A DNA stretch of 64,000 nt, from positions 62,001-126,000 of IMG/VR virus record IMGVR_UViG_3300027710_000011; one strand, written 5' to 3'. Shown here one piece after another: positions 3,640 through 50,207 of the stretch; positions within the stretch are counted from its first letter, which is position 1; every line of letters starts with the position of its first letter. The position numbers and the translations under genes are program-made. The notes beneath the pieces are model-generated. The model saw only the letters and a program-made list of their open reading frames with translations, was not told the DNA's origin and did not search any database.

Positions 3640-4054
3640 AGAACGTATCCTCCGTAGACAGACCGAACTTCACCAGGTGAGCGCCGAGGTTGGTGCCGAA
3701 TTCTTCTCGCAGCTTGTTGCCAGCCGCAAGACTGTCTTTGTCATCAAAGAACTCGTGCAAACTACCGGCAAAATCCTCTTCTTCATCTGTGATGCGGAAG
3801 TCCACCGCGCCTTCGATGTTGATGTCCAGCATATCGTCGAGTCTAGGCATCATTGCCGCCATTGGAACGCCGACTTCAGCATTTCCATCATCGATGAGAA
3901 ACAGTACGCTGCGAACAGCCAAACGTACACGTTCCTCAGGCGACAAGTCTTCGCGGCTTGCACACTGCGTTGCGATTTCGTCGCAAGCAGCAGCAAACAT
4001 CAGAGCAGTTTCTTCAGCTGTGTAGAACAACTGCTGTTTGCTGTTTTCATTCAT
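3617..4054 (-). CDS. Hypothetical phage protein
   Basis: Acidic 145-aa ORF coupled to the AAA ATPase stop. Confidence 0.75.
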   Translation of the reverse strand: MNENSKQQLFYTAEETALMFAAACDEIATQCASREDLSPEERVRLAVRSVLFLIDDGNAEVGVPMAAMMPRLDDMLDINIEGAVDFRITDEEEDFAGSLHEFFDDKDSLAAGNKLREEFGTNLGAHLVKFGLSTEDTFYAENKET

Positions 4055-5403
4055 TACCTACGCGCTCCTGATTTGGTATTAAACATCACTTTTCGATCAT
4101 GGCCGAAAGGATAAGCGTCCATTGGATAATTCGCCGGATACACGTGAACTGGCGAATTATCACCTTGTTGTGCCCGTTGACGTTCCATTCGAATCTTACC
4201 TTCTTCGTCAGCAGCCTTATCGAATGGATCAGAGTCGACACTTTCATCGAACTTCTTACCCATTTCCTGCAGCTTACCGACGCGACCCGTTGATTGCCGC
4301 ATTGTCAACTCATAGGTGACGTCGTCTTTGACATACGTGTAAGAACGCATATCTTCAGACATTTTTGTGATCTCATCCTCAAACAAGGTAACCGCCGTCG
4401 TTACTTCTTTGACTTCCGGGTCCTCGCTACAGAAGAAGATCTTGACAACAGTACCAACGTCCGTGACACGCTCGGTCGCGGTTTTGTTCTCCACGCGGCC
4501 GTCAGGATAAGTGATCTTTGCGTGATAAAGAACCGTACCACGTAGTTTAGTGGCGCCGCCAAACATCAAGTCCATAGCACCCATTACGGTCAAGCCTGGT
4601 GTGTGGTTCATTTCGTCCACCATGGCCGCCATCATGTCGAAGTTCAAAGAGTCGTACAGAACAGATAGCTTTGCAAAATGCATCACTGTCTTTTCTTCTT
4701 TGCTCTTGATGTTGTCGCGAACATAACCAACCAAGACATCGAGGGGCAGCAACGAGTAGTACTTCGTGTAGCGAATCCGGCTCGGACGATCGAACAAGTA
4801 TTGAGAGATGCGATCGCTGTCGTTGCCAGCAATCACGATCAACTTCTTACCGCCGCCCACGCTGCCGTCAAAGATGCTGAGCAAGCGATCTTGCGCGGAA
4901 GTGTCGTTGTTACCACTGTTCTCGATTTGCTTGGAGTACTGCTTGTCGAACTCTTCGAACACGAACATCACGTCCTGCGTCAAGGAACGCACCACCATCT
5001 CCAACATCCCGGCCGGGTATTGCTGGCTGCAGTAGATCACAGGCATGTCCATCATGGTGGCTGTGCGTGCCATAGCCATGATAGTGGTGGTCTTGCCAGA
5101 GCCCTTCTGGCCAACCAGCATCACGCCCATGTTGCCTTTCAGGCGCTCGAACGTACGGAAGTAATGATCGACGTCCTTGAGGACATCACCATACAACTTC
5201 TCCGGCGGTTGCACGAAGGGGATCGGTTCCAGCACAGCGCCTTTTTCTGGATCAAAAGTCAGCTCGTAAGGAACAGCGCGCAACTGTTGCACGGCTTTGC
5301 CCGGAACAGCGCGGGTTGGAACAATGTTGCCATTGTCCATCTCACGAAAGATATACGTAACTGGCTGCGCTTGGTTAGAGCCGGCTTTGTTCGTCTGAGT
5401 CAT
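4054..5403 (-). CDS. AAA+ ATPase
   Basis: Walker A GQKGSGKT, Walker B FVFEEFD, sensor/Arg-finger region FDRPSRI. Confidence 0.85.
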   Translation of the reverse strand: MTQTNKAGSNQAQPVTYIFREMDNGNIVPTRAVPGKAVQQLRAVPYELTFDPEKGAVLEPIPFVQPPEKLYGDVLKDVDHYFRTFERLKGNMGVMLVGQKGSGKTTTIMAMARTATMMDMPVIYCSQQYPAGMLEMVVRSLTQDVMFVFEEFDKQYSKQIENSGNNDTSAQDRLLSIFDGSVGGGKKLIVIAGNDSDRISQYLFDRPSRIRYTKYYSLLPLDVLVGYVRDNIKSKEEKTVMHFAKLSVLYDSLNFDMMAAMVDEMNHTPGLTVMGAMDLMFGGATKLRGTVLYHAKITYPDGRVENKTATERVTDVGTVVKIFFCSEDPEVKEVTTAVTLFEDEITKMSEDMRSYTYVKDDVTYELTMRQSTGRVGKLQEMGKKFDESVDSDPFDKAADEEGKIRMERQRAQQGDNSPVHVYPANYPMDAYPFGHDRKVMFNTKSGARR

Positions 5404-5514
5404 CTTGTTTCCCTTTTGGTTGTGGAATAGGTCTAGTGAGAAAATGTGGTGGTTCAGCCACATGTAGAAATTCAAAAGCAGACAGAATCGAAACCCTGTC
5501 TGCCGGTTTATTGC

Positions 5515-7369: not shown

Positions 7370-8071
7370 TTATCCTTTAATTTGCTTGGTGTAGTTAATG
7401 TCGTGAACCTTGCGCATCAAACGAACGATGTCAAGCTTCGCTTTATGATTCTCCGCGATGTTGCTGGGAAATTCAGTTCTCTCAAACATACCCAAGGTTG
7501 CCAGCATGAACTGACCTTGAGAATAGTTTTTGAATTCGTTACCGGCTCGTCCGCGAATGTCGCAAAGACACGCGTTGATAAAGCTCATTGCGAGGCCGGC
7601 GTCGTCCAGCAGACGGGCATCTCGGATGAAGCTAAGGATGCGTGATGAACGCATCGAAAAGATCGAGTGCAACCTGATGTGTTGTTCACACATCAGCAAA
7701 GCCAATTCTCGGTCCATCCCTTCAATACCCAGGCGATCACAAACTGCTTTCACCAGAGGAATGCCGGTGCGCTCATGATCGTGGTGGCGAGGCAATATTT
7801 CAGCAGGCGTGATACCTTTGCCTAGATCATGCACGAGAACAGCAAATCGCTCCGAAGCAGTCAGCTTTAGGCGACGAGATTGTTCCATGCACAGTTCCAT
7901 GTGGATACCGACATCGATCTCAGGATGGTGTTCAGGACGCTGAGGAACGCCGTAGAGCGCATCAACTTCAGGTAAGTAGGACTTGAGCAGTCCGCTTGCG
8001 CGCTGATCTTGCAGCTCTTGTGCAGGGTTTTCACTTTTCAAGAGCTTCAGGAGATGTTCGTTGGTTGTCAT
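7370..8071 (-). CDS. Stand-alone HD phosphohydrolase homologous to the C-terminal domain of CCA-adding enzyme
   Basis: LPEVDALYGVPQ..HHPEIDVGIH and FAVLVHDLGKGITP..PRHHDH match the Cca HD domain; no DxD nucleotidyltransferase head. Confidence 0.85.
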   Translation of the reverse strand: MTTNEHLLKLLKSENPAQELQDQRASGLLKSYLPEVDALYGVPQRPEHHPEIDVGIHMELCMEQSRRLKLTASERFAVLVHDLGKGITPAEILPRHHDHERTGIPLVKAVCDRLGIEGMDRELALLMCEQHIRLHSIFSMRSSRILSFIRDARLLDDAGLAMSFINACLCDIRGRAGNEFKNYSQGQFMLATLGMFERTEFPSNIAENHKAKLDIVRLMRKVHDINYTKQIKG

Positions 8072-9012: not shown

Positions 9013-9876
9013 TCAGACCTTCCCCAAGGTCAAGCCCGTCTGGCCTTGGTATTTGCCCTTGCGATCAGCGTAGCTGGTCTTGCAGTCCTTGTTGCCGCGG
9101 AAGAAGATGAACTGAGCAATGCCTTCGTTCACGTAGACCTTCATCGGCAGGGACGTCGAGTTGGAGATCTCGATCACCACGTTGCCGTGGAAACCAGGTT
9201 CGATTGGTGTCACGTTGACAATGGCGCCAGCGCGAGCGTAGGTCGACTTGCCCACACAGATCACCATGACGTTGCGAGGGATCTTGAAGTACTCGGGCGT
9301 CACGCCGAGTACATAGCTGTTCGGAGGCAAGATGACGTACTCGCAGCCTTGCGCATCCGTGTGCACCTTGGCATCCACCAGGCAATCTTCACCACCGTTC
9401 TTGGGATCGATGATGCCGCCGTTGGCGTTGGTGAACAGACGGAACTTGTCGCTGACGCGCACGTCGTAGCCGAACGACGACAGACCGTAGCTGAGTACTT
9501 TGGCACCCTCGGATGTTTCGCGAATGCACTCGGTCTTGAAGTCCGAGATCATCGGCTCAAAGCGATTCTTGATCTGCTCGGTGACCGGCAGAGTGTAGAG
9601 TTGCTTCAAGCGCTCAGATTCAGCGTTGATGGCGTCAACAGCGTGCTGAGCCATCGGCCACGTGTTCAGGTTCGGATTGTTCGACCGGAAAGCCTGCAGA
9701 GCTGCGTCGTGACCTGCTTCGTCGTAGTACGTTTCGGGCAGAACGCACAGCTCTTGAATTTCAGTATCCGACAAGATGCCGGACGATGCGCCGATCATGA
9801 TTCCCATGGCGTGCTTGAGCTGATCTTCGCTCAGAACAGCAGCCAGGTCATTGGGGCGAGGAGATTGAATCTTCAT
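9013..9876 (-). CDS. dcd: dCTP deaminase
   Basis: [40 protein letters not shown] and [13 protein letters not shown] motifs. Confidence 0.93.
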
Positions 9877-9889
9877 GGTTTTGGTTCTC

Positions 9890-10462
9890 TTATTTGACAC
9901 GCTTCAGAAACGATGGTTGTGGTTTAGGCTCTGGCGCAGGAGTTTCTTGCGCAGCTGCCGAATCAGTCTTCTCGCCGACCAGCGTGTCGCCAGTAAGCGC
10001 TTCGTACATGCCTGGTGTAATGGCACCAATCAGCAGGGTTTGCGCCATGGTGCCGTAGCCGAACAACTCACCCAGCTTGACGCCAGCTGGACAAAAAGCC
10101 ATCAGCATCGCTGTGAACGGAACGAACACGCTGCGAGCCTGGCCGTTGAATCGCATCATGCAACCGATGCCTTGATCGCTGATGAAGAAGTTCTTGCAGG
10201 CGCTGTCTGCAAAATTCAAGACCAGCGTCTTGCATTGATAAGACGTCGTCATCAACTTATCGTCTTTCACGACAAGTACGGGATATTCTTCCGTCTGATG
10301 AGGAATGCCTTGTACACCTTCGACGCCAGGGAAGTTGTAGATGAACTTCACATGGACCGGATCGCTCATTGCGCGCATCCAGCCAAGCAGACCAGGAACG
10401 ATGAAAGGACGGCTATCAACAACGCCCTGCAGCTGCATGTAATCAAAATCTTTTCTGGTCAT
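9890..10462 (-). CDS. sspB: SspB-like ClpXP protease adaptor
   Basis: RPFIV..W, LVLNF...A, MRFNG...VFVP..A and C-terminal PSFLKRVK align with SspB and its ClpX-binding tail (LRVVK). Confidence 0.8.
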
Positions 10463-10554
10463 GGTACCCTCTTTGTAGCTATACTAATAAAAGATCAGTG
10501 TAAAAATCACACGGCATAAAGGACTGGCGTTGAACCAGTCCTTTATGTATCTAG

Positions 10555-11339: not shown

Positions 11340-11443
11340 TTTGTCTCCAATACGTTTGTTTACTAGATCGGTAATATGTGGCTATCGCATTCTGCAATAC
11401 GTAATAAAAGTGGGCTAGATACCCACTTTTATTTTGTGTTTGT

Positions 11444-12118: not shown

Positions 12119-15100
12119 ATGCCTTCAAATACAACAAAACCATACGGCGGGTTAAGTCGTGACCGACTGACTCAGCTGATCAATGACTTCAACAACACGA
12201 ATCGCGTTGAAGGCGTAGATTTCATCTACGGCGTGCCGGTAGCACACACAGGTCCAAATGGTGAGAACACAAAGATCACCCTGACGCCTTTGCCGGACAC
12301 GATTTACGACGGTCCTGTGGACGTGCATTATTCGCGTCTGCGACTGAACGTTCTGGAGTTCTTGCCAGAAGGTTTCATTCGCGCTGCGGTGATCAAAGAC
12401 TTTCCTTTCTGGATCCACTCAGTCTTGCCGGAGATCAATGCCGCGTTGGGTCTGAATCTGGATGCATCGGAAGTCGTCAACACGCACTACGAAGGTCCTC
12501 AATCAACGTACCGTTTGGAAATCGTTCCAAGCGCTTCTGTTGCTTGGAGGCCGAGCTTCTATGATTTTCACGCCGTTCTCGGTGTGGAGCTCACAGATTC
12601 GTTCTTCACTGACATCGCAGATGGTTTCATCTGGAGCGGTAACGCGCTTGAAGACGTATTGCCGCGCGATTATCTGGAAGGCTTCGTTGCAGAAACCACG
12701 GAACTGAGTGTCGTCATTACTGGCGAAGTTGCGAATGGTTTTGCTCCGCGCGTAACACAGCTGTCTGAAATCATCCCTGTCAATAAGCTGGACGGTTTCG
12801 CTGCTGCGCTGTACGAACTCGAACGCGCTATTCCGACTGACAAGTTGGACGGCTTTGTTTTGACACCCGGTAAGCTTGAAGACCTGATTGGTCCCAAGGC
12901 CCTGGGCTTCGTGGCAGAAACATCACCTCTGGCTTCCTTCATTCCTGATGTAGCCGACGGCTTCGTTTGGACATTGTCGAGCCTGGCTGACTTCTTCCCC
13001 AGTAACGTGATGGGTGGCTTTGAGTTGACGCCTGGCGTTATCTCTAGCTTCTTCCCTGATAAGCTGGACGGCTTTGCCGCGACAACGACATCTCTGCATA
13101 CGTTGATCAACGATGTGGCTGACGGTTTCGATCGCTTCAGTACCAACCTGGGTACGCTGATTGCCGACAAGGCAGACGGTTTTGACCCTGTGTTCTTCTC
13201 GATTCCTTCGGCCTTCAACTCAGACATCCTGGACGGCTTTGTTGTTGCCGAACGTGAGTTGGGTGAGTTCTACCCTAGTAATGTCCTGGACGGCTTTGCT
13301 AAGTCCGAGAGTAACTTCGCTGGATTCTTCCCTAGCGACGTGGTAGATGGTTTCGTGTACACGCCTGGTGACTTGGCTGCTTTCTTTGCCAATAAGGCAG
13401 ACGGCTTTATCTGGACTGAGCGCGAGCTGGGCGAACTGATCGCTGACACTGCTGATGGATTCATTCGTCCTGAAGTAGAGTTGTCGACGCTGATCTACAA
13501 GGATCAAGCAGAAGGCTTCGTACCTAACACCACTGAACTGAGTGAAGTGATTGTTCAAGACGTTGCTACGGGCTTTGTTCGTACCGACAATGAACTGTCC
13601 AACCTGTTCACTGATGTAGCATCCGGTTTTGCGTTGACACCGCGCGAATTGAGCGAGTTGTTTGTTGATCAAGCATCTGGCTTCATCGTTAGCGATACCA
13701 ACCTGAGTGAAATTCTGGCTGACGTACTGAACGGTTTCGTACGTACCCCGACCTTGCTCGAACAAGTGATTTCTGACGTTGCCACTGGCTTCGATGCAAT
13801 CACTTACACACTGGAAGAGAAATTCAATTCAGACATCCTGAACGGTTTCGTTGAAACATTCAGTGACTTGGAACGTCTGATCGATGATTTCGCCAACGGT
13901 TTCGCTTATACGCCAATGCCACTTGGACAGATGTTCGGTGACATCGGTTTGGGCTTCGACATCGTTCCGACAAATCTGTCTGAACTGATTGGCGATGTCG
14001 CTACTGGTTTTGAAGTTCAAGATTCCACGATCGGGACGTTCTTCCAAGACGTCGCTGATGGCTTTGTCCTGACAGAAAACACACTGTCGGCAGTATTTGA
14101 AGACCAAGCCCTCGGGTTTGTTCCACAAACAACTGGTTTGACTGAAGTCATTCCTGGCCATGTGATGGGAGGTTTCTCGCCTTCGACTACAGAGCTGGCT
14201 GAGCTGATCGTTACTGATGTGGCTGACGGTTTCATTCCGCGCACAACAGCACTGGACGACTTGATTGCTAACGTCGCTTCTGGCTTCACGTTGACGGAGG
14301 GTGACCTCCAAGACTTGATTGCTACAGACGTGATGGATGGCTTCACGCCTGAGACCACTGAATTGTCCGTTCTGTTTGACGACGCTGCCAACGGCTTTGT
14401 TTACACAGAAGGCGACATTGGTCAGTTGATCACTGATACAGCAGATGGTTTTGTTTGGACAGCCTCTGACATCGCTGGATTCTTTAGCGATAGCGCAGAT
14501 GGTTTCGTTCTGACCGAAGGTAATCTGGCATCTCTGTTCGTGGACGCTGCCAACGGCTTCTCACGGACTGAATCCAGCCTGACTGTCTTCATCTCCGACC
14601 TCGCTGACGGTTTCACACCCGTTGTCGTGGCACTTTCGGACTTGATCGCAGATAAGGCAGATGGCTTTGCACCTTTCGAACCTGACCTGAATTCGTTGAT
14701 TGCTGACAAAGCTGATGGATTCGTACTGACACCTGGAGAGGTTGAAAACCTGTTCAGCGATGTAATGGACGGCTTCGTGCCTGAAACTACATTGATCGAT
14801 ACGCTGTTCGTTACTGATGTAGCACGCGGCTTCACAGCAGAGACATCTGCTCTAGGTACTTTCCTGCAAGACACAGCTGACGGTTTCGTTTGGACACCTA
14901 CCGATATTGATAGCAAGTTTGTATTCGATGTCGTTGAAGGTTTTGTCTGGACTGAATCCTCGCTGGACAGTTTCATCACTGCTGATGTACTCGATGGCTT
15001 TGTTGCAAGCGTAACTCCGCTTAGCGACATGGTGACCGCTGACGTGTTGGATGGGTTCATTGCTCAGACAACAGCTTTGTCAGAATTGATCAGTAACGTG

Positions 15101-16396
15101 GCGACGGGCTTTAGCCCTGAATCTACACCACTGAGCACTCTGATCACAGCAGACGTAGCGACGGGCTTCATTGTTAGCGAAACGGCTCTCAGCGAGATTA
15201 TCGTTGGTGAGACCGCTAACGGGTTCTCTGCACAGACTACAGCGCTCTCAGCGTTGATTACGGACGTCGCAGACGGCTTTGTGCGTGGTGAAAGTGAACT
15301 GACTAGCTTCATTGCCGACAAGGCAGATGGCTTCGTCTTTACACCTGGTCAGCTGGAAGTGCTGATTGGTAACGTTGCAACCGGTTTCGTACCGGAAACA
15401 ACTGACCTGTCTGCAATGATCGGTGACGTTGCAACCGGCTTCGTCTTTACGCCTGGTCTGATCAGTGATCTGTTTGTTGAGATTGCTGATGGCTTTGCTC
15501 CTGGTACTAGCGACATCGCTACGTTCTTTGCAGATGTTGCTGACGGCTTTGCTGTCGGCACAACGGTTCTGTCGACACTCATCGCTGATAAGGCCGATGG
15601 TTTCGTGGCGGCCGCAACTGATCTGTCAAGCTTGGTCGCAAACGTTGCTGACGGTTTCGTCTACACCGAGAACGACCTGACGAACGTGATCGCTGACAAG
15701 GCAGACGGGTTTGTTGCTGAAACAACAGACATTAATGGCTTGTTCGCTAGCAATGTGTTGGATGGCTTCGATAGCGTTCACACCACGATTGCCACAATGA
15801 TCTCTGACGTCGCTTCTGGCTTCGTCTGGAGTGAACGTGCTCTTAGCGAGCTGATTGTCCCTGATGTCCTGGACGGCTTCGACACTGGCGAGCAAACGCT
15901 CAATAGCGTGATTGCTGACAAGGTTGATGGCTTCCTGGCCACACCTGATGCAGACGGTCAATTGACTAACGCACTCTTCGTATTGCGTCCTGCAGATACA
16001 CAGTGGGCTGACGGTACCGTTATCGATGGTCGTATTGTTGAGAACATGCTTGTTCCAACCAGTCAAGATACGTGGGAAACTTTGCCCGCAACTTGGTCTG
16101 AATGGAATACGTGGCTGAGCAATCCGAACCCGATTGTCGAGTACGAAGAAGTAATTGACCTGGGTCAAGTCCGCACTGTTCGCTTGCGTGTTGATGCTGC
16201 TATCAATACAGCAACGACGGAAGGATGGGAAGCTAGGTACGTTACCAGCCTTGACGGAGTTGATTGGGGCAATGAAACATCGTGGCGTGATTTCCCAGGC
16301 AATAACGTAACAACGCGTTACGTGAAGGTCAAATGGGCCGCTCTCGGTACCTTCGCTACATTGTTGTCGCCAATGCTGACTGTTTACGAAAATTAA
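12119..16396 (+). CDS. Large virion structural / fibre-like protein with ~19-aa acidic tandem repeats
   Basis: 1425 aa; N-terminal domain with G..dvhY.Rl motif typical of phiKZ-like virion proteins; roughly 55-60 L..LI.D.A.GF repeats; distinct C-terminal domain. Confidence 0.75.
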   Translation: MPSNTTKPYGGLSRDRLTQLINDFNNTNRVEGVDFIYGVPVAHTGPNGENTKITLTPLPDTIYDGPVDVHYSRLRLNVLEFLPEGFIRAAVIKDFPFWIHSVLPEINAALGLNLDASEVVNTHYEGPQSTYRLEIVPSASVAWRPSFYDFHAVLGVELTDSFFTDIADGFIWSGNALEDVLPRDYLEGFVAETTELSVVITGEVANGFAPRVTQLSEIIPVNKLDGFAAALYELERAIPTDKLDGFVLTPGKLEDLIGPKALGFVAETSPLASFIPDVADGFVWTLSSLADFFPSNVMGGFELTPGVISSFFPDKLDGFAATTTSLHTLINDVADGFDRFSTNLGTLIADKADGFDPVFFSIPSAFNSDILDGFVVAERELGEFYPSNVLDGFAKSESNFAGFFPSDVVDGFVYTPGDLAAFFANKADGFIWTERELGELIADTADGFIRPEVELSTLIYKDQAEGFVPNTTELSEVIVQDVATGFVRTDNELSNLFTDVASGFALTPRELSELFVDQASGFIVSDTNLSEILADVLNGFVRTPTLLEQVISDVATGFDAITYTLEEKFNSDILNGFVETFSDLERLIDDFANGFAYTPMPLGQMFGDIGLGFDIVPTNLSELIGDVATGFEVQDSTIGTFFQDVADGFVLTENTLSAVFEDQALGFVPQTTGLTEVIPGHVMGGFSPSTTELAELIVTDVADGFIPRTTALDDLIANVASGFTLTEGDLQDLIATDVMDGFTPETTELSVLFDDAANGFVYTEGDIGQLITDTADGFVWTASDIAGFFSDSADGFVLTEGNLASLFVDAANGFSRTESSLTVFISDLADGFTPVVVALSDLIADKADGFAPFEPDLNSLIADKADGFVLTPGEVENLFSDVMDGFVPETTLIDTLFVTDVARGFTAETSALGTFLQDTADGFVWTPTDIDSKFVFDVVEGFVWTESSLDSFITADVLDGFVASVTPLSDMVTADVLDGFIAQTTALSELISNVATGFSPESTPLSTLITADVATGFIVSETALSEIIVGETANGFSAQTTALSALITDVADGFVRGESELTSFIADKADGFVFTPGQLEVLIGNVATGFVPETTDLSAMIGDVATGFVFTPGLISDLFVEIADGFAPGTSDIATFFADVADGFAVGTTVLSTLIADKADGFVAAATDLSSLVANVADGFVYTENDLTNVIADKADGFVAETTDINGLFASNVLDGFDSVHTTIATMISDVASGFVWSERALSELIVPDVLDGFDTGEQTLNSVIADKVDGFLATPDADGQLTNALFVLRPADTQWADGTVIDGRIVENMLVPTSQDTWETLPATWSEWNTWLSNPNPIVEYEEVIDLGQVRTVRLRVDAAINTATTEGWEARYVTSLDGVDWGNETSWRDFPGNNVTTRYVKVKWAALGTFATLLSPMLTVYEN
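12620..15940 (+). repeat. Degenerate ~57-nt (19-codon) coding tandem repeat
   Basis: GAC/GAT-GGN-TTY (D-G-F) recurs about every 57-60 nt. Confidence 0.85.
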
Positions 16397-22902: not shown

Positions 22903-24939
22903 ATGGCTAACATTGTTACACGAGCCCTTGGCTTCGTGGATGTGTCTGAAGACGAGAAATACATCACAATCGGCGGTGTGAAGGCTGAGAATATCGGTAA
23001 GGACATTCTCCGCATGTGGGGAACGAATCGCATTGAGCAACACATGTTCAATGAGATTGGTGGACGCGTTATCAGGTTCCCAAAGTTCTTTGGTCCTGAG
23101 GTGCATTACATCCTCAGCAAGATTTTGAACAACAAGAAGGTCGTTACAAGTCGTGGAAGTATCAAGGACGCTTTGGCTCTCCTTGAACAAAACACTTGGA
23201 TGAAACGCATCACGCAAGAGTACGACCCTATTATTGATTTGGATGCCGTCAAGCTGTTCAATAAGACGCCGATGCCGCACCAGATTAATTTCTTCCAGAT
23301 GTATAGTCATCGTACGCAATCGTACGGACTGAACGGCTATCTCCTGTCCGCTGGCGCTGGCACTGGTAAGACACTGATGGCACTCATCTTGTCCGAAATG
23401 CTGCATGCTGACTACAAGGTGATTGTCTGTCCAAAGAATGCTGCTTACCGAGTGTGGGTAACTTCTTTGGCTGAAGAATACAAAGATCCTCGCAAGGCTT
23501 GGGTAATCGCAGACGGTAAGGCTTACGAAGGTCAGAAGTACATTGTCTGTCATTACGAAGGTTTGGAAAAGCTCAAGGCCATTGCTGGCCGCCTTTCCGG
23601 ACGCGTGATCATCCCGCTTGATGAGTCTCACAATTTGAACAGTGACGATTCCTTGCGGACTCAATACTTCATCGACATCTGTCGCTCCATCCGTAACGTA
23701 CACGTGCTGTGGATGTCGGGTACACCAGTGAAAGCTCTTGGGTACGAAAGCATTCCACTGTTGCGCTCCATTGATCCGCTCTTCACCGATGAAGTGGAAG
23801 CGCGGTTCAAGAAGATCTATGGGCGTGATGCCACAAAGGCTTTGGACATCTTGCGTCAACGTATCGGCATGATTTCTTTCCACGTGGAAAGCTCTGCGGT
23901 TGTGACAAATGAGACGACGACTCACAATCGGATGATCAGTATCCCGAACGGTAAGATATACACGTTGGATGCTGTGCGTACCGAGATGCAGAAGTTCATT
24001 GAAACTCGTCTGAAATTCTACTTGGGCGAGAGCAAGAGTTTCAAGAAAACTTATGAGCGAGCGCTTGATATCTACGAAGACACGATCAAGGATAATGGCC
24101 TGCTGTCTAAAGACAGTGAAGAACGTCGTGCATTCAAGACGTACAAGCGCTACATCGAGCTGATCTCTTCCGGCTTTGATCCAATGAGTATGGCTAAGGA
24201 AGCCAAGTATTGCAATCATTTCGAGAAGAACATCATTGCTCCTACTTTGCCAAAAGACTTGAAGAAGGCTTTCATGAGCGCCAAGTCTGTGGTGAAGTAT
24301 CCGCAGCTTAAGGTACTTGGTGAAGCACTCGGTGGTGTTCTGAGCAAGAAGCGTGTTCAATGTCACTTGGACATGATTCCGCATATGGGACTAGAAAAGA
24401 TCATCAACGCGGCTTCGAAGAAGACCATCATCTTCTCGAGTTACGTTGAGGTGGTGGATGCAATCACGAAGTACCTGAAGGGTAAGGGTTTCAATCCCAT
24501 TGCCGTACACGCAAGTAGTGGTCAGGAACTCTCAGCATCCGTTAACCAGTTCTTCAAAGATCCGAATCTCAATCCGTTGGTGGCGACTTTCCAATCGCTA
24601 TCGACAGCAGTTCCGATTATCTGCGCGAACTGTACTGTGTTCACGAACATGCCGTTCCGTGAATACGAGATTACACAAGCTCGTGCTCGCACGAATCGTT
24701 TGGGTCAAGATACTGCTGTTGAGTACTACAACACGTACCTTGACACTGGTAAAGAGCCCAACGTCTCCACCCGCTCACGTGACATCCTGGAATGGTCGCG
24801 CCAACAAGTTGCAGCCATCCTTGGCCAAGACTATGGCGGCACTATTACAGCTGAAATGGTGAACTCGATGGAGAGTTTGACAGAGGACTACACTCCTTTC
24901 GAGATCAGTCTCGCTATGGAGGAATACGCAGACTTTTAA
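22903..24939 (+). CDS. SNF2-like (SF2) helicase
   Basis: PMPHQ, SAGAGTGKT, VCPK, IPLDESH, MSGTP, IFSSY and QARARTNRLGQ motifs. Confidence 0.88.
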   Translation: MANIVTRALGFVDVSEDEKYITIGGVKAENIGKDILRMWGTNRIEQHMFNEIGGRVIRFPKFFGPEVHYILSKILNNKKVVTSRGSIKDALALLEQNTWMKRITQEYDPIIDLDAVKLFNKTPMPHQINFFQMYSHRTQSYGLNGYLLSAGAGTGKTLMALILSEMLHADYKVIVCPKNAAYRVWVTSLAEEYKDPRKAWVIADGKAYEGQKYIVCHYEGLEKLKAIAGRLSGRVIIPLDESHNLNSDDSLRTQYFIDICRSIRNVHVLWMSGTPVKALGYESIPLLRSIDPLFTDEVEARFKKIYGRDATKALDILRQRIGMISFHVESSAVVTNETTTHNRMISIPNGKIYTLDAVRTEMQKFIETRLKFYLGESKSFKKTYERALDIYEDTIKDNGLLSKDSEERRAFKTYKRYIELISSGFDPMSMAKEAKYCNHFEKNIIAPTLPKDLKKAFMSAKSVVKYPQLKVLGEALGGVLSKKRVQCHLDMIPHMGLEKIINAASKKTIIFSSYVEVVDAITKYLKGKGFNPIAVHASSGQELSASVNQFFKDPNLNPLVATFQSLSTAVPIICANCTVFTNMPFREYEITQARARTNRLGQDTAVEYYNTYLDTGKEPNVSTRSRDILEWSRQQVAAILGQDYGGTITAEMVNSMESLTEDYTPFEISLAMEEYADF

Positions 24940-28174: not shown

Positions 28175-30793
28175 ATGTTGTCTATCCTAATTAAGCGCGA
28201 CGGAACTCGCGAACCATTGATGGCAGAAAAAGTCAATGGGTGGGGTGAATGGGCGGCCGCTAATCTCGGAGATACCGTAGATTGGACTGCCGGCGTTATG
28301 AGTGCTGTGGCTTCTTTGCCCGAAGTTGCCCATAGCCAAGACTTGCAGCACGCTTTGATTCGTTACTTCTTGAATCTGGGCACGTCTGGTGGTCAGCGCA
28401 TGGCAGGACGTCTGTATGCGGCGACGGTCCACAAAGACATGTTCGGCAAAGCCTACATGCCGACGATTTGGAACGTGCATCAGCAGCTGCTCAACGCCGG
28501 CTTTATGGTCAAGCTGGATTACTCGGATGAAGAATACGCCGAGTTGCAAAGCGTGATCGATCATGAGCGCGATTTCGACTACATGCACACCCAGCTGTAT
28601 CAAATCCGCTACAAGTACTCGCTGCGCAACCAACTGACGGGTACTGAATACGAAAGCCCTCAATTCGTGTTCATGCGTATGGCCATGGCTTTGGCTGAAG
28701 ACCAACCAAAGCATCGTCGTATGAAGGATGCGAAGAAGTGGTACAACTACTTCTCCCTGAACAAGATCAACGCTCCGACGCCGAACTACACCAATCTGGG
28801 CACCAAGCTCAACGGTTACGCTTCGTGCTGTCTGTACACCGTTGATGACACTGCTGACTCTTTGGCAGTGGGCGACCACATTGCGTACAAGATGACTGTC
28901 ATGTCGGCCGGCATTGGCAACATCTTGATGACTCGCTCCATTCTGGATCCCGTGCGCGGTGGTTTGTTCAAGCATCGCGGCAAGCTGCCTTACCTGCGCT
29001 CCATGCAAGGCGCAGTCACTGCCAACGTGAAGAACGGCCGCAACGGCGCATGCACATCGTCCTTCGTGGCGTTCGATCCTGAGATCGATACGTTGCAGCA
29101 GTTGAAGAATCCCATGACGGTTTCTGACAAACAAATCCGCGGGATGGATTACAACATGCAAGGCAACAAGTTCCTTGGTCGCAAAGCAGCTGCCAATGAA
29201 GATGTGTTCTTGTTCAACATCTTCACGGCTCCTGACCTCTTTGCCGCTTTCTACGGCAAGGATCTGAACAAGTTCATCGAGCTGTACAACAAGTACGAAG
29301 CCGATCCGAACTTCAAGAAGGTTTACAAGTCCGCTCGTGAGATCATCATCAATACCGAGAACGAGGCTTACGAAACCGGCCGTGCGTACTTGTCCTTCAT
29401 GGACGAGATCAACTACCACACGCCGTACAAGGATCCGATCAACACATCCAACTTGTGTGTTGAAATCACGGAACCCACGCACGCGTACCAGAACATGATT
29501 GATCTGTACACCAACGGCCCAGTTGGTTACATCGAGATTCGTGTGATTGGCAGCGATGAGCCGATGCGCATGAAAGCCCCTGACGCCGTGTATCTGGTTG
29601 ATCACGAAGAATGGGAAGCTGCGCAGAACCTGATTCCTGGCGTGATGTTCCGTAAGCTCGGCGAAGATCGTGTTTACACGGTGACCGAGATTATCGACGT
29701 CAAGAAAGAACCTGAAGTGGCCATGTGCTCTTTGGGTGCCATCGTCAAACCCAATGTGACTGACGACGAATACGAGGACGTGATGTATTACACGCTCCTC
29801 ATGATCGACAAGTGCATTCACAAGTCCGATTACCCGCTGGCTCACGTCGGCTACACCGCCAAGGCTCGTATGGCTGCCGGTGTGGGGATCATGAGTTTGG
29901 CTCACCATCTGGCGAAGCTGGGTCTGGACTATACCGGCGAAGCTGGTAAGCGTGAAATCCACAAGGTGTTCGAAACGCACATGTACTACGCTATCCGTGC
30001 TTCTTTGAAGCTGGGTAAAGAGCTGGGCAATGCACCGTGGATCCACCGTACCAAGTGGGCTGAAGGTTGGGTTCCTACTCATACGGCCAACAAGCGTGTT
30101 CAGGAGATCGTTCCTGGCGGCTTTGTCAAGCAGTACGACTGGGATGCGCTGAGCAAAGAGATCAAGGCTAACGGCGGTATCCGCAACTCTGCCTTGGTTG
30201 CACACATGCCTGGCGAATCCAGCTCCAAAGCGTCTGGTGGTCTGAACAGCGTGTACCCTGCACGCGATACGTCCCTCATCAAGACGGACAACGACATCAC
30301 GACGTACTGGACTGTTCCGGACAGCAGCTTGTATTACCAACCGGCATGGGAAGTTCCGACCAAGGACATGATCGAAGATTACTCGATCATGCAACTTTGG
30401 ACCGACCAAGCTATCTCGGCAGACGAATATCGCAAGATCGAAGGTGCTGAGAAGGTCGGCACCGATGAGATGTTGCAGAACTACTTCCTTCGTTGCAAGT
30501 ACGGCCAGAAGACTCGTTACTACATGAACACCAAGACTTCCAAAGCGGTCAAGCTCGATCGCGCAGAAACTGCGTGTGGTGTAGAAACGAGTACCAGTGG
30601 CGTTCATGTGGAGAACATGATTGCTGAGTCCAAAGAAAACTGGAACGGCGGTCCTGTTCATGAAGGCTGGGCAAGTAACGATGCTCCTGCGCCGGACATC
30701 GCGCATCGTCCACCGACAATTAGTAGCGGTGACGATAGCGTCTACAACACAGAAGCTTCGGCTGGCTGCGAAGGCGGCTTCTGCAGTCTGTAA
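28175..30793 (+). CDS. nrdA: Ribonucleotide reductase class Ia alpha subunit
   Basis: PTP, YASCCLY, SNLCVE, AMCSLG, GVGIMS, HMPGESSS, KTRYY and C-terminal CEGGFC. Confidence 0.96.
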   Translation: MLSILIKRDGTREPLMAEKVNGWGEWAAANLGDTVDWTAGVMSAVASLPEVAHSQDLQHALIRYFLNLGTSGGQRMAGRLYAATVHKDMFGKAYMPTIWNVHQQLLNAGFMVKLDYSDEEYAELQSVIDHERDFDYMHTQLYQIRYKYSLRNQLTGTEYESPQFVFMRMAMALAEDQPKHRRMKDAKKWYNYFSLNKINAPTPNYTNLGTKLNGYASCCLYTVDDTADSLAVGDHIAYKMTVMSAGIGNILMTRSILDPVRGGLFKHRGKLPYLRSMQGAVTANVKNGRNGACTSSFVAFDPEIDTLQQLKNPMTVSDKQIRGMDYNMQGNKFLGRKAAANEDVFLFNIFTAPDLFAAFYGKDLNKFIELYNKYEADPNFKKVYKSAREIIINTENEAYETGRAYLSFMDEINYHTPYKDPINTSNLCVEITEPTHAYQNMIDLYTNGPVGYIEIRVIGSDEPMRMKAPDAVYLVDHEEWEAAQNLIPGVMFRKLGEDRVYTVTEIIDVKKEPEVAMCSLGAIVKPNVTDDEYEDVMYYTLLMIDKCIHKSDYPLAHVGYTAKARMAAGVGIMSLAHHLAKLGLDYTGEAGKREIHKVFETHMYYAIRASLKLGKELGNAPWIHRTKWAEGWVPTHTANKRVQEIVPGGFVKQYDWDALSKEIKANGGIRNSALVAHMPGESSSKASGGLNSVYPARDTSLIKTDNDITTYWTVPDSSLYYQPAWEVPTKDMIEDYSIMQLWTDQAISADEYRKIEGAEKVGTDEMLQNYFLRCKYGQKTRYYMNTKTSKAVKLDRAETACGVETSTSGVHVENMIAESKENWNGGPVHEGWASNDAPAPDIAHRPPTISSGDDSVYNTEASAGCEGGFCSL

Positions 30794-30841
30794 CCAACCG
30801 GGAGGGCCTGAGTGCCCTCCCACCTCTGAGATACCACAAGC

Positions 30842-31948
30842 ATGTTAGAAAAATCAATCTTCAACATTGGTAAGTCCGATTACCGTGGCCATCCCAGTTT
30901 GTTCCTGGGTCAAGAAGCAGGTCTCTTCGACACTGTGAACAAACAGTTCCCAAAGGTTTGGGATAACTACAAGAACATGAAGTCCCTTGACTGGGACGAG
31001 CTTGAATTCGATTTCAAGTCATGCAATACTGAGTTCAAGTCACGTCCTGCAGGAATGACTCGTCGGATGATCAGCACGCTGGGCTGGCAATGGGAAGGTG
31101 ATTCCGTTGCATCCCGTACCGTGCTGCCTATCATGGCACCTTTCATCTCTGCCCCGGAGTTGCAAGCTGCTTGGGGTCGCATCACTGATAATGAAGTGCT
31201 GCACGCTGCCACCTATTCGGAAATCGTTCGCTACTCGTTCGATAACCCGCATGAAGTGCTCACTGAAGTCTTGAAGATCAAGGAATCTCTGTCGCGTTTG
31301 AAGACCGTTTCTGACGTGATGGCCAAGGTCTATCGTGTTTCTCACGAATACGCATTGGGCATGCGTGAGAACAATCAAGACACGTACAACCACATCTACC
31401 TCTTTGTGGTTGCGCTGTTGTGCTTGGAACGCATTCAGTTCATGGGTTCGTTCGCAATCACCTTCGCTATTGGTGAAGTCGGTGCGTTCATGCCTATCGT
31501 GAAAGCTGTTCAGCGTATCGCTCAAGATGAGCTGGAAGTTCACGTTGATCTGAACAAGATCATTTTGGCCAACGAGCACAAGACTGAACGCGGTCGCATT
31601 GCTCGTAAGGAAACTCTGTCACAAGTCCGCGCAATGGTTCGCGAATGCTTGGGTGCAGAACAAGCCTGGGTGGACTACCAAGATCTGGATCACGATCCCC
31701 TCGTGGGTCTGAATGGTCGTTTGCTGCGCGAATGGAACTGCTTGTCGGCTGGCGACGTCTACGACTCTTTGGAACTCCTGCCTGATTCGGATCTGGTGAT
31801 CCCGAAGAAGAACCCAATTGGCTTCATGACCAACTGGCTGGACATGTCCAAGACGCAAGCTGCTGTGCAAGAACAGCAGAACGCGCAGTACAAGGTCAAC
31901 GTCATCACTCGCAATGATGATGGTAAGATCTACGCTGGTGATTTCTGA
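30842..31948 (+). CDS. nrdB: Ribonucleotide reductase class Ia beta subunit
   Basis: WEGDS, DNEVLHAATY, LERIQFMGSF and QDELEVH di-iron and tyrosyl motifs. Confidence 0.95.
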   Translation: MLEKSIFNIGKSDYRGHPSLFLGQEAGLFDTVNKQFPKVWDNYKNMKSLDWDELEFDFKSCNTEFKSRPAGMTRRMISTLGWQWEGDSVASRTVLPIMAPFISAPELQAAWGRITDNEVLHAATYSEIVRYSFDNPHEVLTEVLKIKESLSRLKTVSDVMAKVYRVSHEYALGMRENNQDTYNHIYLFVVALLCLERIQFMGSFAITFAIGEVGAFMPIVKAVQRIAQDELEVHVDLNKIILANEHKTERGRIARKETLSQVRAMVRECLGAEQAWVDYQDLDHDPLVGLNGRLLREWNCLSAGDVYDSLELLPDSDLVIPKKNPIGFMTNWLDMSKTQAAVQEQQNAQYKVNVITRNDDGKIYAGDF

Positions 31949-50132: not shown

Positions 50133-50207
50133 TGGTGCCGGATATCTGGATCGAACAGATGACCTACCGCTTACAAGGCGGTTGCTCTACCACTGAGCTA
50201 AGCCGGC
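50133..50207 (-). tRNA. tRNA-Thr(UGU)
   Basis: Full cloverleaf GCCGGCTTAGCTCAGTGGTAGAGC...CTTGTAA...TTCGATC...GGCACCA with encoded CCA. Confidence 0.95.

What the first reader, a model, noticed from the sequence alone, without database searches (positions are those of the whole stretch)
9890..10462. Phage-encoded SspB-like adaptor with an intact ClpX-docking tail
Seen: the fold motifs align with SspB along the whole N-domain, with a ~20-aa insertion before VLN; the C-terminus [10 protein letters not shown] mirrors the XB peptide RPALRVVK. Known: SspB delivers ssrA-tagged proteins and RseA fragments to ClpXP. Inference: the altered substrate groove could redirect host ClpXP to new targets such as defence proteins or regulators.
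Basis: partly seen in the sequence, partly recalled or inferred. Interest (0 to 1): 0.65.

Follow-up and report, generated by a model that had tools for sequence, protein, structure and literature searches.

The report
Divergent SspB-like ClpX adaptor in jumbo phage
A nucleus-forming jumbo phage carries a real but highly diverged copy of the bacterial SspB protein, with the tail that normally docks onto the host ClpXP protease; similar phage genes are already annotated, but none has been tested functionally.

Summary
ORF 9890-10462 (-) encodes a 190-aa protein ending [10 protein letters not shown]. It falls below Pfam's SspB cut-off (23.1 vs 27 bits). Three results still place it in the SspB family: profile-profile comparison with short-loop SspBs gives 99.6% probability (E 8e-25); an AlphaFold model (pLDDT 84) superposes on every residue of the SspB crystal chains (Z 12.5-13.2, rmsd 2.4 A, next fold Z 3.6); and 63 of 67 relatives match Pfam SspB.

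The tail L-K-R-V-K is kept across an 8-member phage clade (67% identity) while the Pro/Glu-rich linker before it drifts (25%). 60 of 67 relatives carry such a tail. dN/dS is 0.13.

The genome is a 277-kb chimallin-encoding phage with no ClpX, ClpP or tmRNA of its own, so any docking partner is host ClpX.

The most likely function is a tethering adaptor for host ClpXP. Its cargo is unknown, and the "redirected to defence proteins" idea is untested. Phage SspB homologs are already annotated (Erwinia phage RAY gp039, Pseudomonas phage pf16 gp18, PHROG 8945), so this is a new, divergent member of a known kind. The ClpX-docking prediction job gave no verdict.

The parts
9890..10462 (-). Complete CDS of the SspB-like protein (190 aa plus stop codon at 9890-9892)
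   Evidence: ORF list and sequence. dN/dS is 0.13 against the 90%-identical relative. Eight-member clade with conserved synteny.
10415..10462 (-). Residues 1-16: N-terminal extension absent from short-loop SspB, with invariant F6, D7, Y8, Q10 and D16. Role unknown.
   Evidence: Alignment A1 invariant columns. 64% mean pairwise identity in the clade. Low model confidence, pLDDT 56 for residues 1-10.
10364..10414 (-). Residues 17-33: helix alpha-1 (RPF..PGL..W), equivalent to E. coli SspB RRPYLLRAFYEWL. In SspB this helix is the dimer-interface helix (the interface role is my own knowledge, not tested here).
   Evidence: HMM alignment to 1yfn/8et3. hhalign. Model helix 18-32 at pLDDT 82-92.
10316..10363 (-). 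Residues 34-49: first strand and the PGVE motif (E. coli PGVQ)
10229..10315 (-). Residues 50-78: the loop region holding the 21-residue insertion. It is modelled as a long beta-hairpin (strands 56-66 and 69-83) and its sequence is variable.
   Evidence: hhalign gap of 21 residues. This region is 30 residues here against 9-11 in short-loop SspBs. pLDDT 87-95. 26% identity within the clade.
10091..10228 (-). Residues 79-124: conserved SspB core (TLVLNFA..A....[22 protein letters not shown]). N83, A88, R104 and P115 are nearly invariant across 67 relatives.
   Evidence: Pfam, PHROG and PDB hits all map here. A2 near-invariant columns. pLDDT 94-97.
9989..10090 (-). Residues 125-158: a second clade-specific stretch (about 125-148) followed by the conserved TPGM helix (149-158). 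The structural alignment places this helix at the C-terminal end of the SspB domain. TPGM may be the counterpart of the G.GM motif of short-loop SspBs (inference).
   Evidence: VIA-align model ranges run to residues 153-159 while covering all target residues. Alignments A1 and A3. Region identities 36% and 56%.
9917..9988 (-). Residues 159-182: flexible tether, rich in Pro/Glu/Ala, variable in sequence and in length (17-25 residues in the clade)
   Evidence: 25% mean pairwise identity and Pro+Glu+Ala fraction 0.42-0.71. 10 of the 16 differences from the 92%-identical relative lie at 159-181. No secondary structure in the model.
9893..9916 (-). Residues 183-190, PSFLKRVK: the ClpX-binding (XB)-type tail. 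L186, R188 and V189 are invariant in the clade.
   Evidence: A1 invariant columns. 67% identity against 25% for the linker. The same tail type occurs in 60 of 67 relatives. It aligns to E. coli RPALRVVK. It fits the LKxh consensus (PMC7226468).
10467..10474 (-). Shine-Dalgarno-like AAAGAGGG, 4 nt upstream of the ATG
   Evidence: Read directly from the sequence. Retained in relatives.
10498..10544 (-). Conserved upstream element. It consists of a hairpin (stems 10518-10527 and 10535-10544, 7-nt loop) just after the stop of the upstream gene, followed by the 19-mer TGCCGTGTGATTTTTACAC (10498-10516).
   Evidence: Alignment with relatives shows changes on both arms of the stem in L002 and a conserved 19-mer, although the proteins are only 43% identical. 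The 19-mer occurs once in the window and once in the whole genome.
9013..9876 (-). Downstream neighbour: dCTP deaminase. The probable start is the ATG at 9876 (287 aa, as in relatives), 13 nt after the SspB-like stop. The SspB-like to DCD gene order is kept in relatives down to 27% identity.
   Evidence: Pfam DCD E 1.6e-28 and phrog_1663 E 2.2e-56. Synteny; one gene intervenes.

Best explanation
The gene encodes a divergent phage member of the SspB adaptor family. Shown here: it has the complete SspB substrate-binding fold with two lineage-specific insertions and an N-terminal extension. [quoted passage not shown] The phage encodes no ClpX, ClpP or tmRNA. Inferred: during infection the protein stays in the cytoplasm, as shown for the RAY homolog. 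It probably dimerises through helix alpha-1, tethers itself by its tails to host ClpX, and holds a bound polypeptide next to the ClpX pore so that ClpXP degrades it faster. The cargo is unknown. It could be host ssrA-tagged chains, a host regulator or defence protein, or a phage protein whose level must be timed.
For: Family and fold: hhalign 99.6%, E 7.9e-25 against short-loop SspBs. 63 of the 67 sequences in alignment A2 (the clade plus the relatives its profile recovered) match Pfam SspB, best 6.9e-34. The profile of that 67-sequence alignment hits full-length E. coli SspB at E 3.6e-32, tail included. The AF2 model has pLDDT 84. The Foldseek top 19 are all SspB. VIA-align gives Z 13.2, rmsd 2.4 A over 111 of 111 residues, with the next fold at Z 3.6. 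Tail: L186, R188 and V189 are invariant. Tail identity is 67% against 25% for the linker. No substitutions occur in residues 182-190 while 10 of 16 changes fall in the linker. The tail fits the LKxh consensus and the SspB XB region. RAY gp39 also ends TLTVVK. Selection: dN/dS 0.13. Partner must be host-encoded: no zf-C4_ClpX, CLP_protease or AAA_2 domain and no tmRNA in the 276,772-bp genome. Context: chimallin homolog at E 3.7e-40. The RAY SspB homolog is cytoplasmic.
Against: No direct evidence of ClpX binding exists; the one complex prediction gave no verdict. The host is unknown, so its ClpX N-domain and ssrA tag could not be compared. The protein is below Pfam's own cut-off. The tether (17-25 residues in the clade) is shorter than the E. 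coli linker visible, and I did not test whether it can reach the ClpX N-domain. Dimerisation was not tested. A conserved tail is equally compatible with a blocker of the ClpX N-domain. The AF2 model was built from an alignment that contains bona fide SspBs, so the fold match is not independent of the sequence homology.
Confidence: 0.6

Rival explanations
1. It is a ClpX N-domain blocker rather than a delivery adaptor. The dimer uses its two XB-type tails to occupy the adaptor-docking sites on ClpX. This would shut out host SspB, RssB and N-domain-dependent substrates, and so stabilise phage or host proteins that ClpXP would otherwise remove.
For: The tail is the most conserved short element outside the core. 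SspB or its XB peptide alone inhibits RssB-dependent sigma-S degradation by competing for the zinc-binding domain (PMC7226468). For phage pf16 gp18 the authors propose competitive inhibition.
Against: The folded domain is under purifying selection as strong as the tail (core 60%, helix 66%, dN/dS 0.13), which a pure tail-presenting decoy would not need beyond dimerisation. No experimental data exist either way.
Confidence: 0.18
2. It is a functional equivalent of host SspB. It keeps ssrA-tag (or anti-sigma fragment) recognition and simply boosts clearance of tagged, truncated proteins during infection, as an auxiliary housekeeping gene.
For: The family-wide conserved core residues are retained: W28, N83, A88, R104 and P115, equivalent to E. 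coli W20, N54, A59, R75 and P86 in the alignments. In SspB only the dimer interface and the ssrA groove are highly conserved (PMC9963277).
Against: Only about 20% identity to solved SspBs. Two insertions and an N-terminal extension flank the core. N83 is not invariant even within the clade; it is E in P0006. The host ssrA tag is unknown and the phage has no tmRNA.
Confidence: 0.15
3. The SspB fold has been reused for a task unrelated to ClpX, for example binding a peptide or protein in nucleotide metabolism together with the neighbouring dCTP deaminase. On this reading the C-terminal motif is conserved for another partner.
For: The SspB-like to dCTP-deaminase gene order persists down to 27% protein identity. 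No ClpX binding has been shown (one search gave no verdict).
Against: The tail type is shared with 60 of 67 relatives, including short-loop SspB-type sequences, and with E. coli SspB, where it is the ClpX-binding element. Gene order in phage early/middle blocks often reflects timing, not interaction (general knowledge).
Confidence: 0.07

Closest known systems
E. coli / H. influenzae SspB (PDB 1ox9, 1yfn, 1ou9, 8et3), the ClpXP specificity-enhancing adaptor
   Same: Same fold over the whole substrate-binding domain (Z 12.5-13.2, rmsd 2.4 A, every target residue aligned). Same order of parts: helix alpha-1, beta domain, disordered linker, C-terminal L-x-x-V-K tail. Conserved W, LN, A, RF and P positions.
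   Different: About 20% identity. A 21-residue hairpin insertion lies between PGV and LN, and a second extra stretch of roughly 25 residues precedes the last helix (my estimate from the alignments and model). There is a conserved N-terminal extension of about 8 residues by E. coli numbering (residues 1-16 in the parts list). The tether is shorter (about 24 residues). The tail is FLKRVK rather than ALRVVK. It is encoded by a phage and scores below Pfam's gathering cut-off.
[quoted passage not shown]
   Same: Also an SspB homolog in a chimallin-encoding jumbo phage with an XB-type tail (KKPTLTVVK). It localises to the cytoplasm outside the phage nucleus and has been suggested as a host-defence countermeasure.
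   Different: RAY gp39 is 150 aa with the short canonical loop. It shares only 30% identity over 46 residues with this protein and lies in a different genomic neighbourhood. tblastn of this protein against 50,697 phage records finds nothing at E 1e-3, so this clade is not represented among deposited phages.
Long-insert SspB-like subfamily in uncultured jumbo-phage contigs (e.g. P0009-P0022, P0021)
   Same: Same 22-52-residue insertion, same tail type and similar length of 155-200 aa. These proteins sit on contigs of 69-240 kb; one carries a Pfam chimallin gene 2.3 kb away, and several have dCTP deaminase adjacent or one gene away. Some are named 'stringent starvation protein B' by their sources.
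   Different: Only 19-29% identical to the window's protein. The window's 8-member clade is a well-supported separate branch (SH-aLRT 99) with its own N-terminal FDYMQ extension and TPGM segment.
Pseudomonas phage pf16 gp18 (SspB analogue in a T4-like phage) and PHROG 8945
   Same: Phage-borne SspB homologs filed under host takeover / auxiliary genes.
   Different: The authors describe pf16 gp18 as highly similar to its host's SspB apart from one deletion, which suggests a host-derived copy. The protein here is deeply diverged and has no detectable close bacterial counterpart.
Bacillus phage SPO1 adaptor-like modulator of ClpCP (PMC6873191)
   Same: Precedent for a phage protein that acts on a host Clp unfoldase in an adaptor-like way (title and abstract listed).
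   Different: Different protease (ClpCP) and Gram-positive host. I did not compare it with SspB by sequence or fold, so this is an analogy only.

Membership tests
SspB family (Pfam PF04386, ClpXP adaptor) | Sequence match to the family model above its curated threshold | tested here: not met
   23.1 bits against a cut-off of 27, covering only residues 78-134. All 7 clade members match weakly; the best E-value among them is 8.2e-5.
SspB family (Pfam PF04386, ClpXP adaptor) | Homology to bona fide SspBs detectable at profile level | tested here: met
   hhalign probability 99.6%, E 7.9e-25 over residues 14-129. 63 of the 67 sequences in alignment A2 (the clade plus its profile hits) match Pfam SspB at E 1e-3 or better. 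The A2 profile hits 8et3_Y at E 3.6e-32.
SspB family (Pfam PF04386, ClpXP adaptor) | SspB substrate-binding-domain fold (N-terminal helix plus beta domain) | tested here: met
   AF2 model pLDDT 84, pTM 0.75. Foldseek top 19 are all SspB at probability 1.00. VIA-align Z 13.2, rmsd 2.4 A, 111 of 111 residues, with the next fold at Z 3.6.
SspB family (Pfam PF04386, ClpXP adaptor) | Disordered linker followed by a C-terminal ClpX-binding (XB) motif, at sequence level | tested here: met
   Linker 159-182 is variable and rich in Pro/Glu/Ala. The tail FLKRVK has invariant L186, R188 and V189. It aligns with RPALRVVK and fits LKxh.
SspB family (Pfam PF04386, ClpXP adaptor) | Physical binding of the tail to the ClpX N-terminal zinc-binding domain | tested here: inconclusive
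   The complex prediction used two copies of E. coli ClpX 1-60, zinc and residues 151-190. It scored 0.22 against a mark of 0.34, which the tool reports as no verdict and not as evidence either way. This needs a bench test.
SspB family (Pfam PF04386, ClpXP adaptor) | Homodimer formed through helix alpha-1 | not tested
SspB family (Pfam PF04386, ClpXP adaptor) | Binds the ssrA tag (or RseA/MucA fragment) in the groove and stimulates ClpXP degradation | not testable with these tools
   The host and its ssrA tag are unknown. Contact-residue lists were not available in the papers I could read, and model coordinates cannot be inspected.
Chimalliviridae-type (nucleus-forming) jumbo phage, as genomic context | Encodes a chimallin (ChmA) homolog in a genome above 200 kb | tested here: met
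   RAY chimallin finds a 706-aa open frame at G000:C1:199812-201572 with E 3.7e-40 and 27% identity. The genome is 276,772 bp. The helicase's best hits are jumbo phages.

The most novel reading that the evidence does not exclude
The long-insert SspB-like proteins could be a chimallivirus-specific class of ClpXP adaptors whose extra hairpin and N-terminal extension create a cargo site different from the ssrA groove. With it the phage would direct host ClpXP to destroy particular cytoplasmic host proteins, such as defence proteins or regulators, while its own DNA sits protected in the phage nucleus. That would be the first phage-encoded substrate-redirecting adaptor for ClpXP.
Probability: 0.22. 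Interest if true: 0.7.

Novelty: new member of a known kind. Interest (0 to 1): 0.36.

Why it matters
Phages are known to inhibit or exploit host proteases. For ClpXP, however, I found no tested example of a phage-encoded delivery adaptor in the literature I could search. SspB-like genes recur in nucleus-forming jumbo phages: RAY, Noxifer, Rebecca, PhiEaH1, 201phi2-1, PhiPA3 and the uncultured lineage here. None has a demonstrated function. This copy adds a deeply diverged clade that standard Pfam annotation misses, yet it keeps the ClpX-docking tail under selection. That strengthens the case that ClpX tethering, rather than the particular cargo, is the conserved requirement. If the cargo were identified, it would show what a nucleus-forming phage needs removed from, or protected in, the host cytoplasm. 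[quoted passage not shown]

Tried and rejected
1. Megablast and tblastn of the region and the protein against 50,697 phage records found no match. The clade is absent from deposited phages, so annotation could not be transferred.

2. The first AlphaFold run used only the 7 close homologs and was too poor to use (pLDDT 51). It was replaced by the 67-sequence run.

3. Complex prediction with two copies of E. coli ClpX 1-60, Zn and tail 151-190 scored 0.22 against a mark of 0.34. The tool reports this as no verdict, and it is not used as evidence for or against binding (the first attempt found the machine busy).

4. phmmer of the tail alone (residues 165-190) against PDB sequences found nothing. 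The query is too short to be informative.

5. I looked for a phage-encoded partner. The genome has no ClpX zinc finger, ClpP, AAA_2 domain or tmRNA. The nearby AAA ATPase (4054-5475) has no CxxC motif, so a phage-internal protease system was rejected.

6. I looked for published ssrA-contact residues of SspB to test the 'altered groove' claim. The papers I could read give no residue lists, so that claim stays untested.

7. I tested whether the conserved upstream 19-mer is a general promoter motif. It occurs once in the window and once in the genome, so it is not a repeated promoter. The sigma-70 scan was at chance level.

8. Sequencing-run search found only DNA metagenomes (subsurface source; sediment, fish gut, pond and aquaculture relatives) and no run on record as RNA. 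Read laying was therefore not run and expression is unknown.

9. Host identification was not achieved.

10. The careful phylogeny did not finish within the time limit, so only the quick tree is cited.

Full report
**1. The observation**

The window is bases 62,001-126,000 of a 276,772-bp IMG/VR virus record rated complete. On the minus strand, 9890-10462 is an uninterrupted ORF of 190 codons. It starts at an ATG preceded by AAAGAGGG and ends in ...[14 protein letters not shown].

**2. Is it SspB-like?**

The single sequence matches only weakly.
- Pfam SspB (PF04386) scores 23.1 bits, E 8.2e-5, below the 27-bit gathering cut-off, and covers only residues 78-134.
- phrog_8945, 'stringent starvation protein SspB-like', scores E 8e-5.
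- phmmer against PDB sequences finds SspB chains at E 0.2-0.5 only.

A word-indexed search of 5.8 billion proteins found six homologs of 43-92% identity, none carrying a precomputed Pfam domain. A profile of these hits E. coli SspB at E 1.8e-4 and aligns both the N-terminal helix and the core.

The exhaustive profile search of 1.84 billion representatives gave 61 proteins at E 1e-3 or better. Of the 67 sequences in the resulting alignment A2 (the clade plus these hits), 63 match Pfam SspB at E 1e-3 or better, the best at 6.9e-34.

Three further results settle homology.
- Profile-profile comparison of the phage clade with the short-loop, canonical-type subset gives probability 99.6% and E 7.9e-25 over residues 14-129.
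- The profile of all 67 sequences hits full-length E. coli SspB (8et3_Y) at E 3.6e-32 from residue 5 to 165. The E. coli tail RGGRPALRVVK aligns to the family's tail.
- The structure agrees, as described next.

**3. Structure**

With the 67-sequence alignment AlphaFold2 gives pLDDT 84 and pTM 0.75, with residues 20-125 above 90. A run with only the 7 close homologs was unusable.

Foldseek against the PDB returns 19 SspB chains first (E. coli, H. influenzae, Agrobacterium AGR_C_3712, Caulobacter), at E 1.4e-6 to 3e-3 and probability 1.00. The next hit is at E 0.15.

VIA-align gives Z 13.2, rmsd 2.4 A, with 111 of 111 residues of 1ou9_B aligned. For the E. coli SspB-ssrA complex chain 1ox9_A it gives Z 12.5 with 108 of 108 aligned. 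The best unrelated fold is Hfq at Z 3.6. The entire SspB substrate-binding domain is therefore present within model residues 11-157, and the extra residues are additions.

One caveat applies. The alignment used for the model contains real SspBs, so the fold match is not independent of the sequence homology, although no templates were used.

**4. Anatomy**

Relative to short-loop SspBs the protein has these parts.
- (a) A conserved N-terminal extension with invariant F6, D7, Y8, Q10 and D16.
- (b) Helix alpha-1 with RPF...W, matching E. coli RRPYLLRAFYEWL.
- (c) The PGVE motif.
- (d) A 21-residue insertion that the model builds as a long beta-hairpin (strands 56-66 and 69-83). It is only 26% identical within the clade.
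- (e) The conserved core TLVLNFA...[23 protein letters not shown]83, A88, R104 and P115 are nearly invariant in all 67 relatives.
- (f) A second clade-specific stretch (about 125-148) and a conserved TPGM helix. The structural alignment places this helix at the end of the SspB domain.
- (g) A tether of 17-25 residues, rich in Pro/Glu/Ala and only 25% identical within the clade.
- (h) The tail PSFLKRVK, 67% identical within the clade, with L186, R188 and V189 invariant.

**5. The tail**

Against the closest relative (90% nucleotide identity), 10 of 16 amino-acid differences fall at residues 159-181 and none at 182-190.

Among the 67 relatives, 60 carry an [LF]-x-x-[VIL] motif in the last 14 residues. 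In 50 it is followed by exactly one residue, usually K.

The phage's LKRV matches the 'LKxh' consensus reported for peptides that bind the ClpX zinc-binding domain. Its authors call that consensus highly similar to the SspB XB region (PMC7226468). The SspB XB peptide binds ClpX at tens of nanomolar and works in any fusion context (PMC12373786).

The 'intact ClpX-docking tail' is thus well supported at sequence level. Physical binding was not shown. The single complex-prediction job gave no verdict and counts neither way.

**6. Is it a working gene?**

dN/dS against the 90%-identical relative is 0.13 at dS 0.35, similar to the adjacent dCTP deaminase at 0.15.

The gene sits in a conserved block: large virion protein, several small ORFs, a phrog_2072 protein, a gene of about 95 aa, the SspB-like gene, then dCTP deaminase. 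This order is kept in relatives at 92%, 51%, 43% and even 27% identity. In a 23%-identical relative one gene intervenes.

In relatives the deaminase is 284-287 aa. Its start in the window is therefore probably the ATG at 9876, not the GTG at 9900, and the two genes do not overlap.

**7. Genomic and biological context**

- The helicase at 22903-24939 finds jumbo phages of Xanthomonas, Klebsiella, Serratia, Burkholderia, Pseudomonas and Erwinia at 39-46% identity.
- RAY chimallin finds a 706-aa homolog in the genome at E 3.7e-40, so this is a chimallin-encoding (nucleus-forming type) jumbo phage of a new lineage.
- The genome has no ClpX zinc finger, ClpP or ClpX/HslU-type AAA_2 domain and no tmRNA. 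The nearby AAA ATPase has no CxxC motif. Any ClpX partner must therefore be the host's.
- The source sample is a subsurface metagenome. Partial matches occur in sediment, fish-gut, aquaculture, pond and freshwater metagenomes. The host is unknown.

**8. A wider subfamily**

The insertion is not unique to this clade. Of the 67 sequences, 49 (the 8-member clade plus 41 others) have 22-52 residues where short-loop SspBs have 9-11. On a quick tree the two forms cluster: 3 changes, with 0 of 500 shuffles as low. The window's 8-member clade is well supported at SH-aLRT 99.

Long-insert members lie on contigs of 69, 154, 233 and 240 kb. One sits 2.3 kb from a Pfam chimallin gene. Two are already named 'stringent starvation protein B' by their sources.

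Structure search of viral models finds SspB-like proteins in Pseudomonas phages Noxifer, PA7, Phabio, 201phi2-1, PhiPA3 and Psa21, Erwinia phages Rebecca and PhiEaH1, Aeromonas phage phiA8-29 and Vibrio phage VAP7.

**9. Prior knowledge**

[quoted passage not shown] It was shown by GFP fusion to stay in the cytoplasm outside the phage nucleus, and it was suggested as a possible counter-defence factor. It ends KKPTLTVVK and matches the present protein at 30% identity over only 46 residues.

Pseudomonas phage pf16 gp18 was described as an SspB analogue in 2017, with a proposed competitive role at RseA.

I found no functional study of any phage SspB. The category is therefore known by annotation, while the function remains open.

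**10. Mechanism**

The best explanation (confidence about 0.6) is a tethering adaptor. A folded SspB domain, probably dimeric, binds a polypeptide. The tails dock on the N-domains of host ClpX. The cargo is handed to the pore as in the SspB-ClpXP delivery complex (PMC9963277).
- Shown here: the fold, the domain layout, tail conservation, purifying selection, and the absence of a phage-encoded partner.
- Inferred: ClpX binding, dimerisation, delivery, and cytoplasmic location.

Three rivals remain.
- A ClpX N-domain blocker (0.18). SspB and its tail peptide do inhibit RssB-dependent degradation.
- A plain functional copy of host SspB acting on ssrA-tagged proteins (0.15).
- A ClpX-independent reuse of the fold, perhaps linked to the neighbouring deaminase (0.07).

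The insertion is the least conserved folded segment, and I could not map groove residues.

**11. Verdict**

This is a new, strongly diverged member of an already annotated kind (phage SspB-like proteins). It belongs to a long-insert subfamily typical of uncultured chimallin-encoding jumbo phages. Interest is moderate: the sequence case for ClpX tethering is good, but the mechanism is unproven and the idea has already been published for a related phage.

Noticed in passing
window 10498-10544 (-), between the SspB-like gene and the upstream 98-aa gene: A hairpin (10518-10527 / 10535-10544) sits just after the upstream gene's stop and shows changes on both arms in a relative. It is followed by a 19-mer, TGCCGTGTGATTTTTACAC, conserved in phages whose proteins are only 43% identical. 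The 19-mer occurs once in the whole 277-kb genome. It may be a terminator plus a gene-specific regulatory site or 5' UTR element.
   Followed up: partly
L010:1304-2122 and L010:4464-5507 compared with window 11340-11443 and about 9012: The 90%-identical relative (276,853-bp contig) carries a GIY-YIG homing-endonuclease gene and an HNH_3 gene inserted in this block. One lies two genes upstream of the SspB-like gene and one just after the dCTP deaminase. The window lacks both, so homing endonucleases are presence/absence polymorphic between near-identical phages.
   Followed up: no
window 9013-9900 (-): A 295-aa ORF holds a dCTP-deaminase domain in its C-terminal half (Pfam DCD, residues 140-268), preceded by an N-terminal region of about 85-140 residues that matched nothing. 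The true start is probably the ATG at 9876 (287 aa), as in relatives. Linkage to the SspB-like gene persists across very divergent phages.
   Followed up: partly
window 12119-16396 (+): A 1425-aa protein with an N-terminal DUF7941 / 'virion structural protein' domain, transcribed divergently from the SspB-like block. Related phages carry equivalents of 967-2335 aa at the same position.
   Followed up: no
window 4054-5475 (-): A 473-aa AAA+ ATPase (Pfam AAA; phrog_2376, E 2.8e-56) with no zinc finger and no ClpX/HslU-type AAA_2 domain. A similar AAA gene lies downstream of the SspB-like gene in the 27%-identical relative P0009. Its function is unknown, and whether it relates to proteolysis or remodelling was not examined.
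   Followed up: partly
window 7370-8071 (-): A 233-aa HD-domain protein matches only the C-terminal part of PHROG 'tRNA nucleotidyltransferase' (profile positions 181-386 of 392). It may be a stand-alone HD phosphohydrolase.
   Followed up: no
window 50133-50207 (-): A single tRNA-Thr (anticodon TGT) is the only tRNA in the whole 277-kb genome. No tmRNA is present.
   Followed up: yes
window 28175-31948 (+); G000:C1:199812-201572 (-), outside the window: Class Ia ribonucleotide reductase large and small subunits (nrdA/nrdB-like) lie in the window. A 706-aa chimallin homolog (27% identity to RAY ChmA, E 3.7e-40) lies elsewhere in the genome and marks this as a nucleus-forming-type jumbo phage of a new lineage; its best helicase identity to any deposited phage is 46%.
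   Followed up: partly
window residues 1-16 of the protein (10415-10462, -): The N-terminal extension M-T-x-K-x-F-D-Y-M-Q is as conserved as the core (64% identity) but has no counterpart in short-loop SspBs and is modelled with low confidence. Its role is unexplained; it could be a self-binding segment, a partner site or a degron.
   Followed up: no
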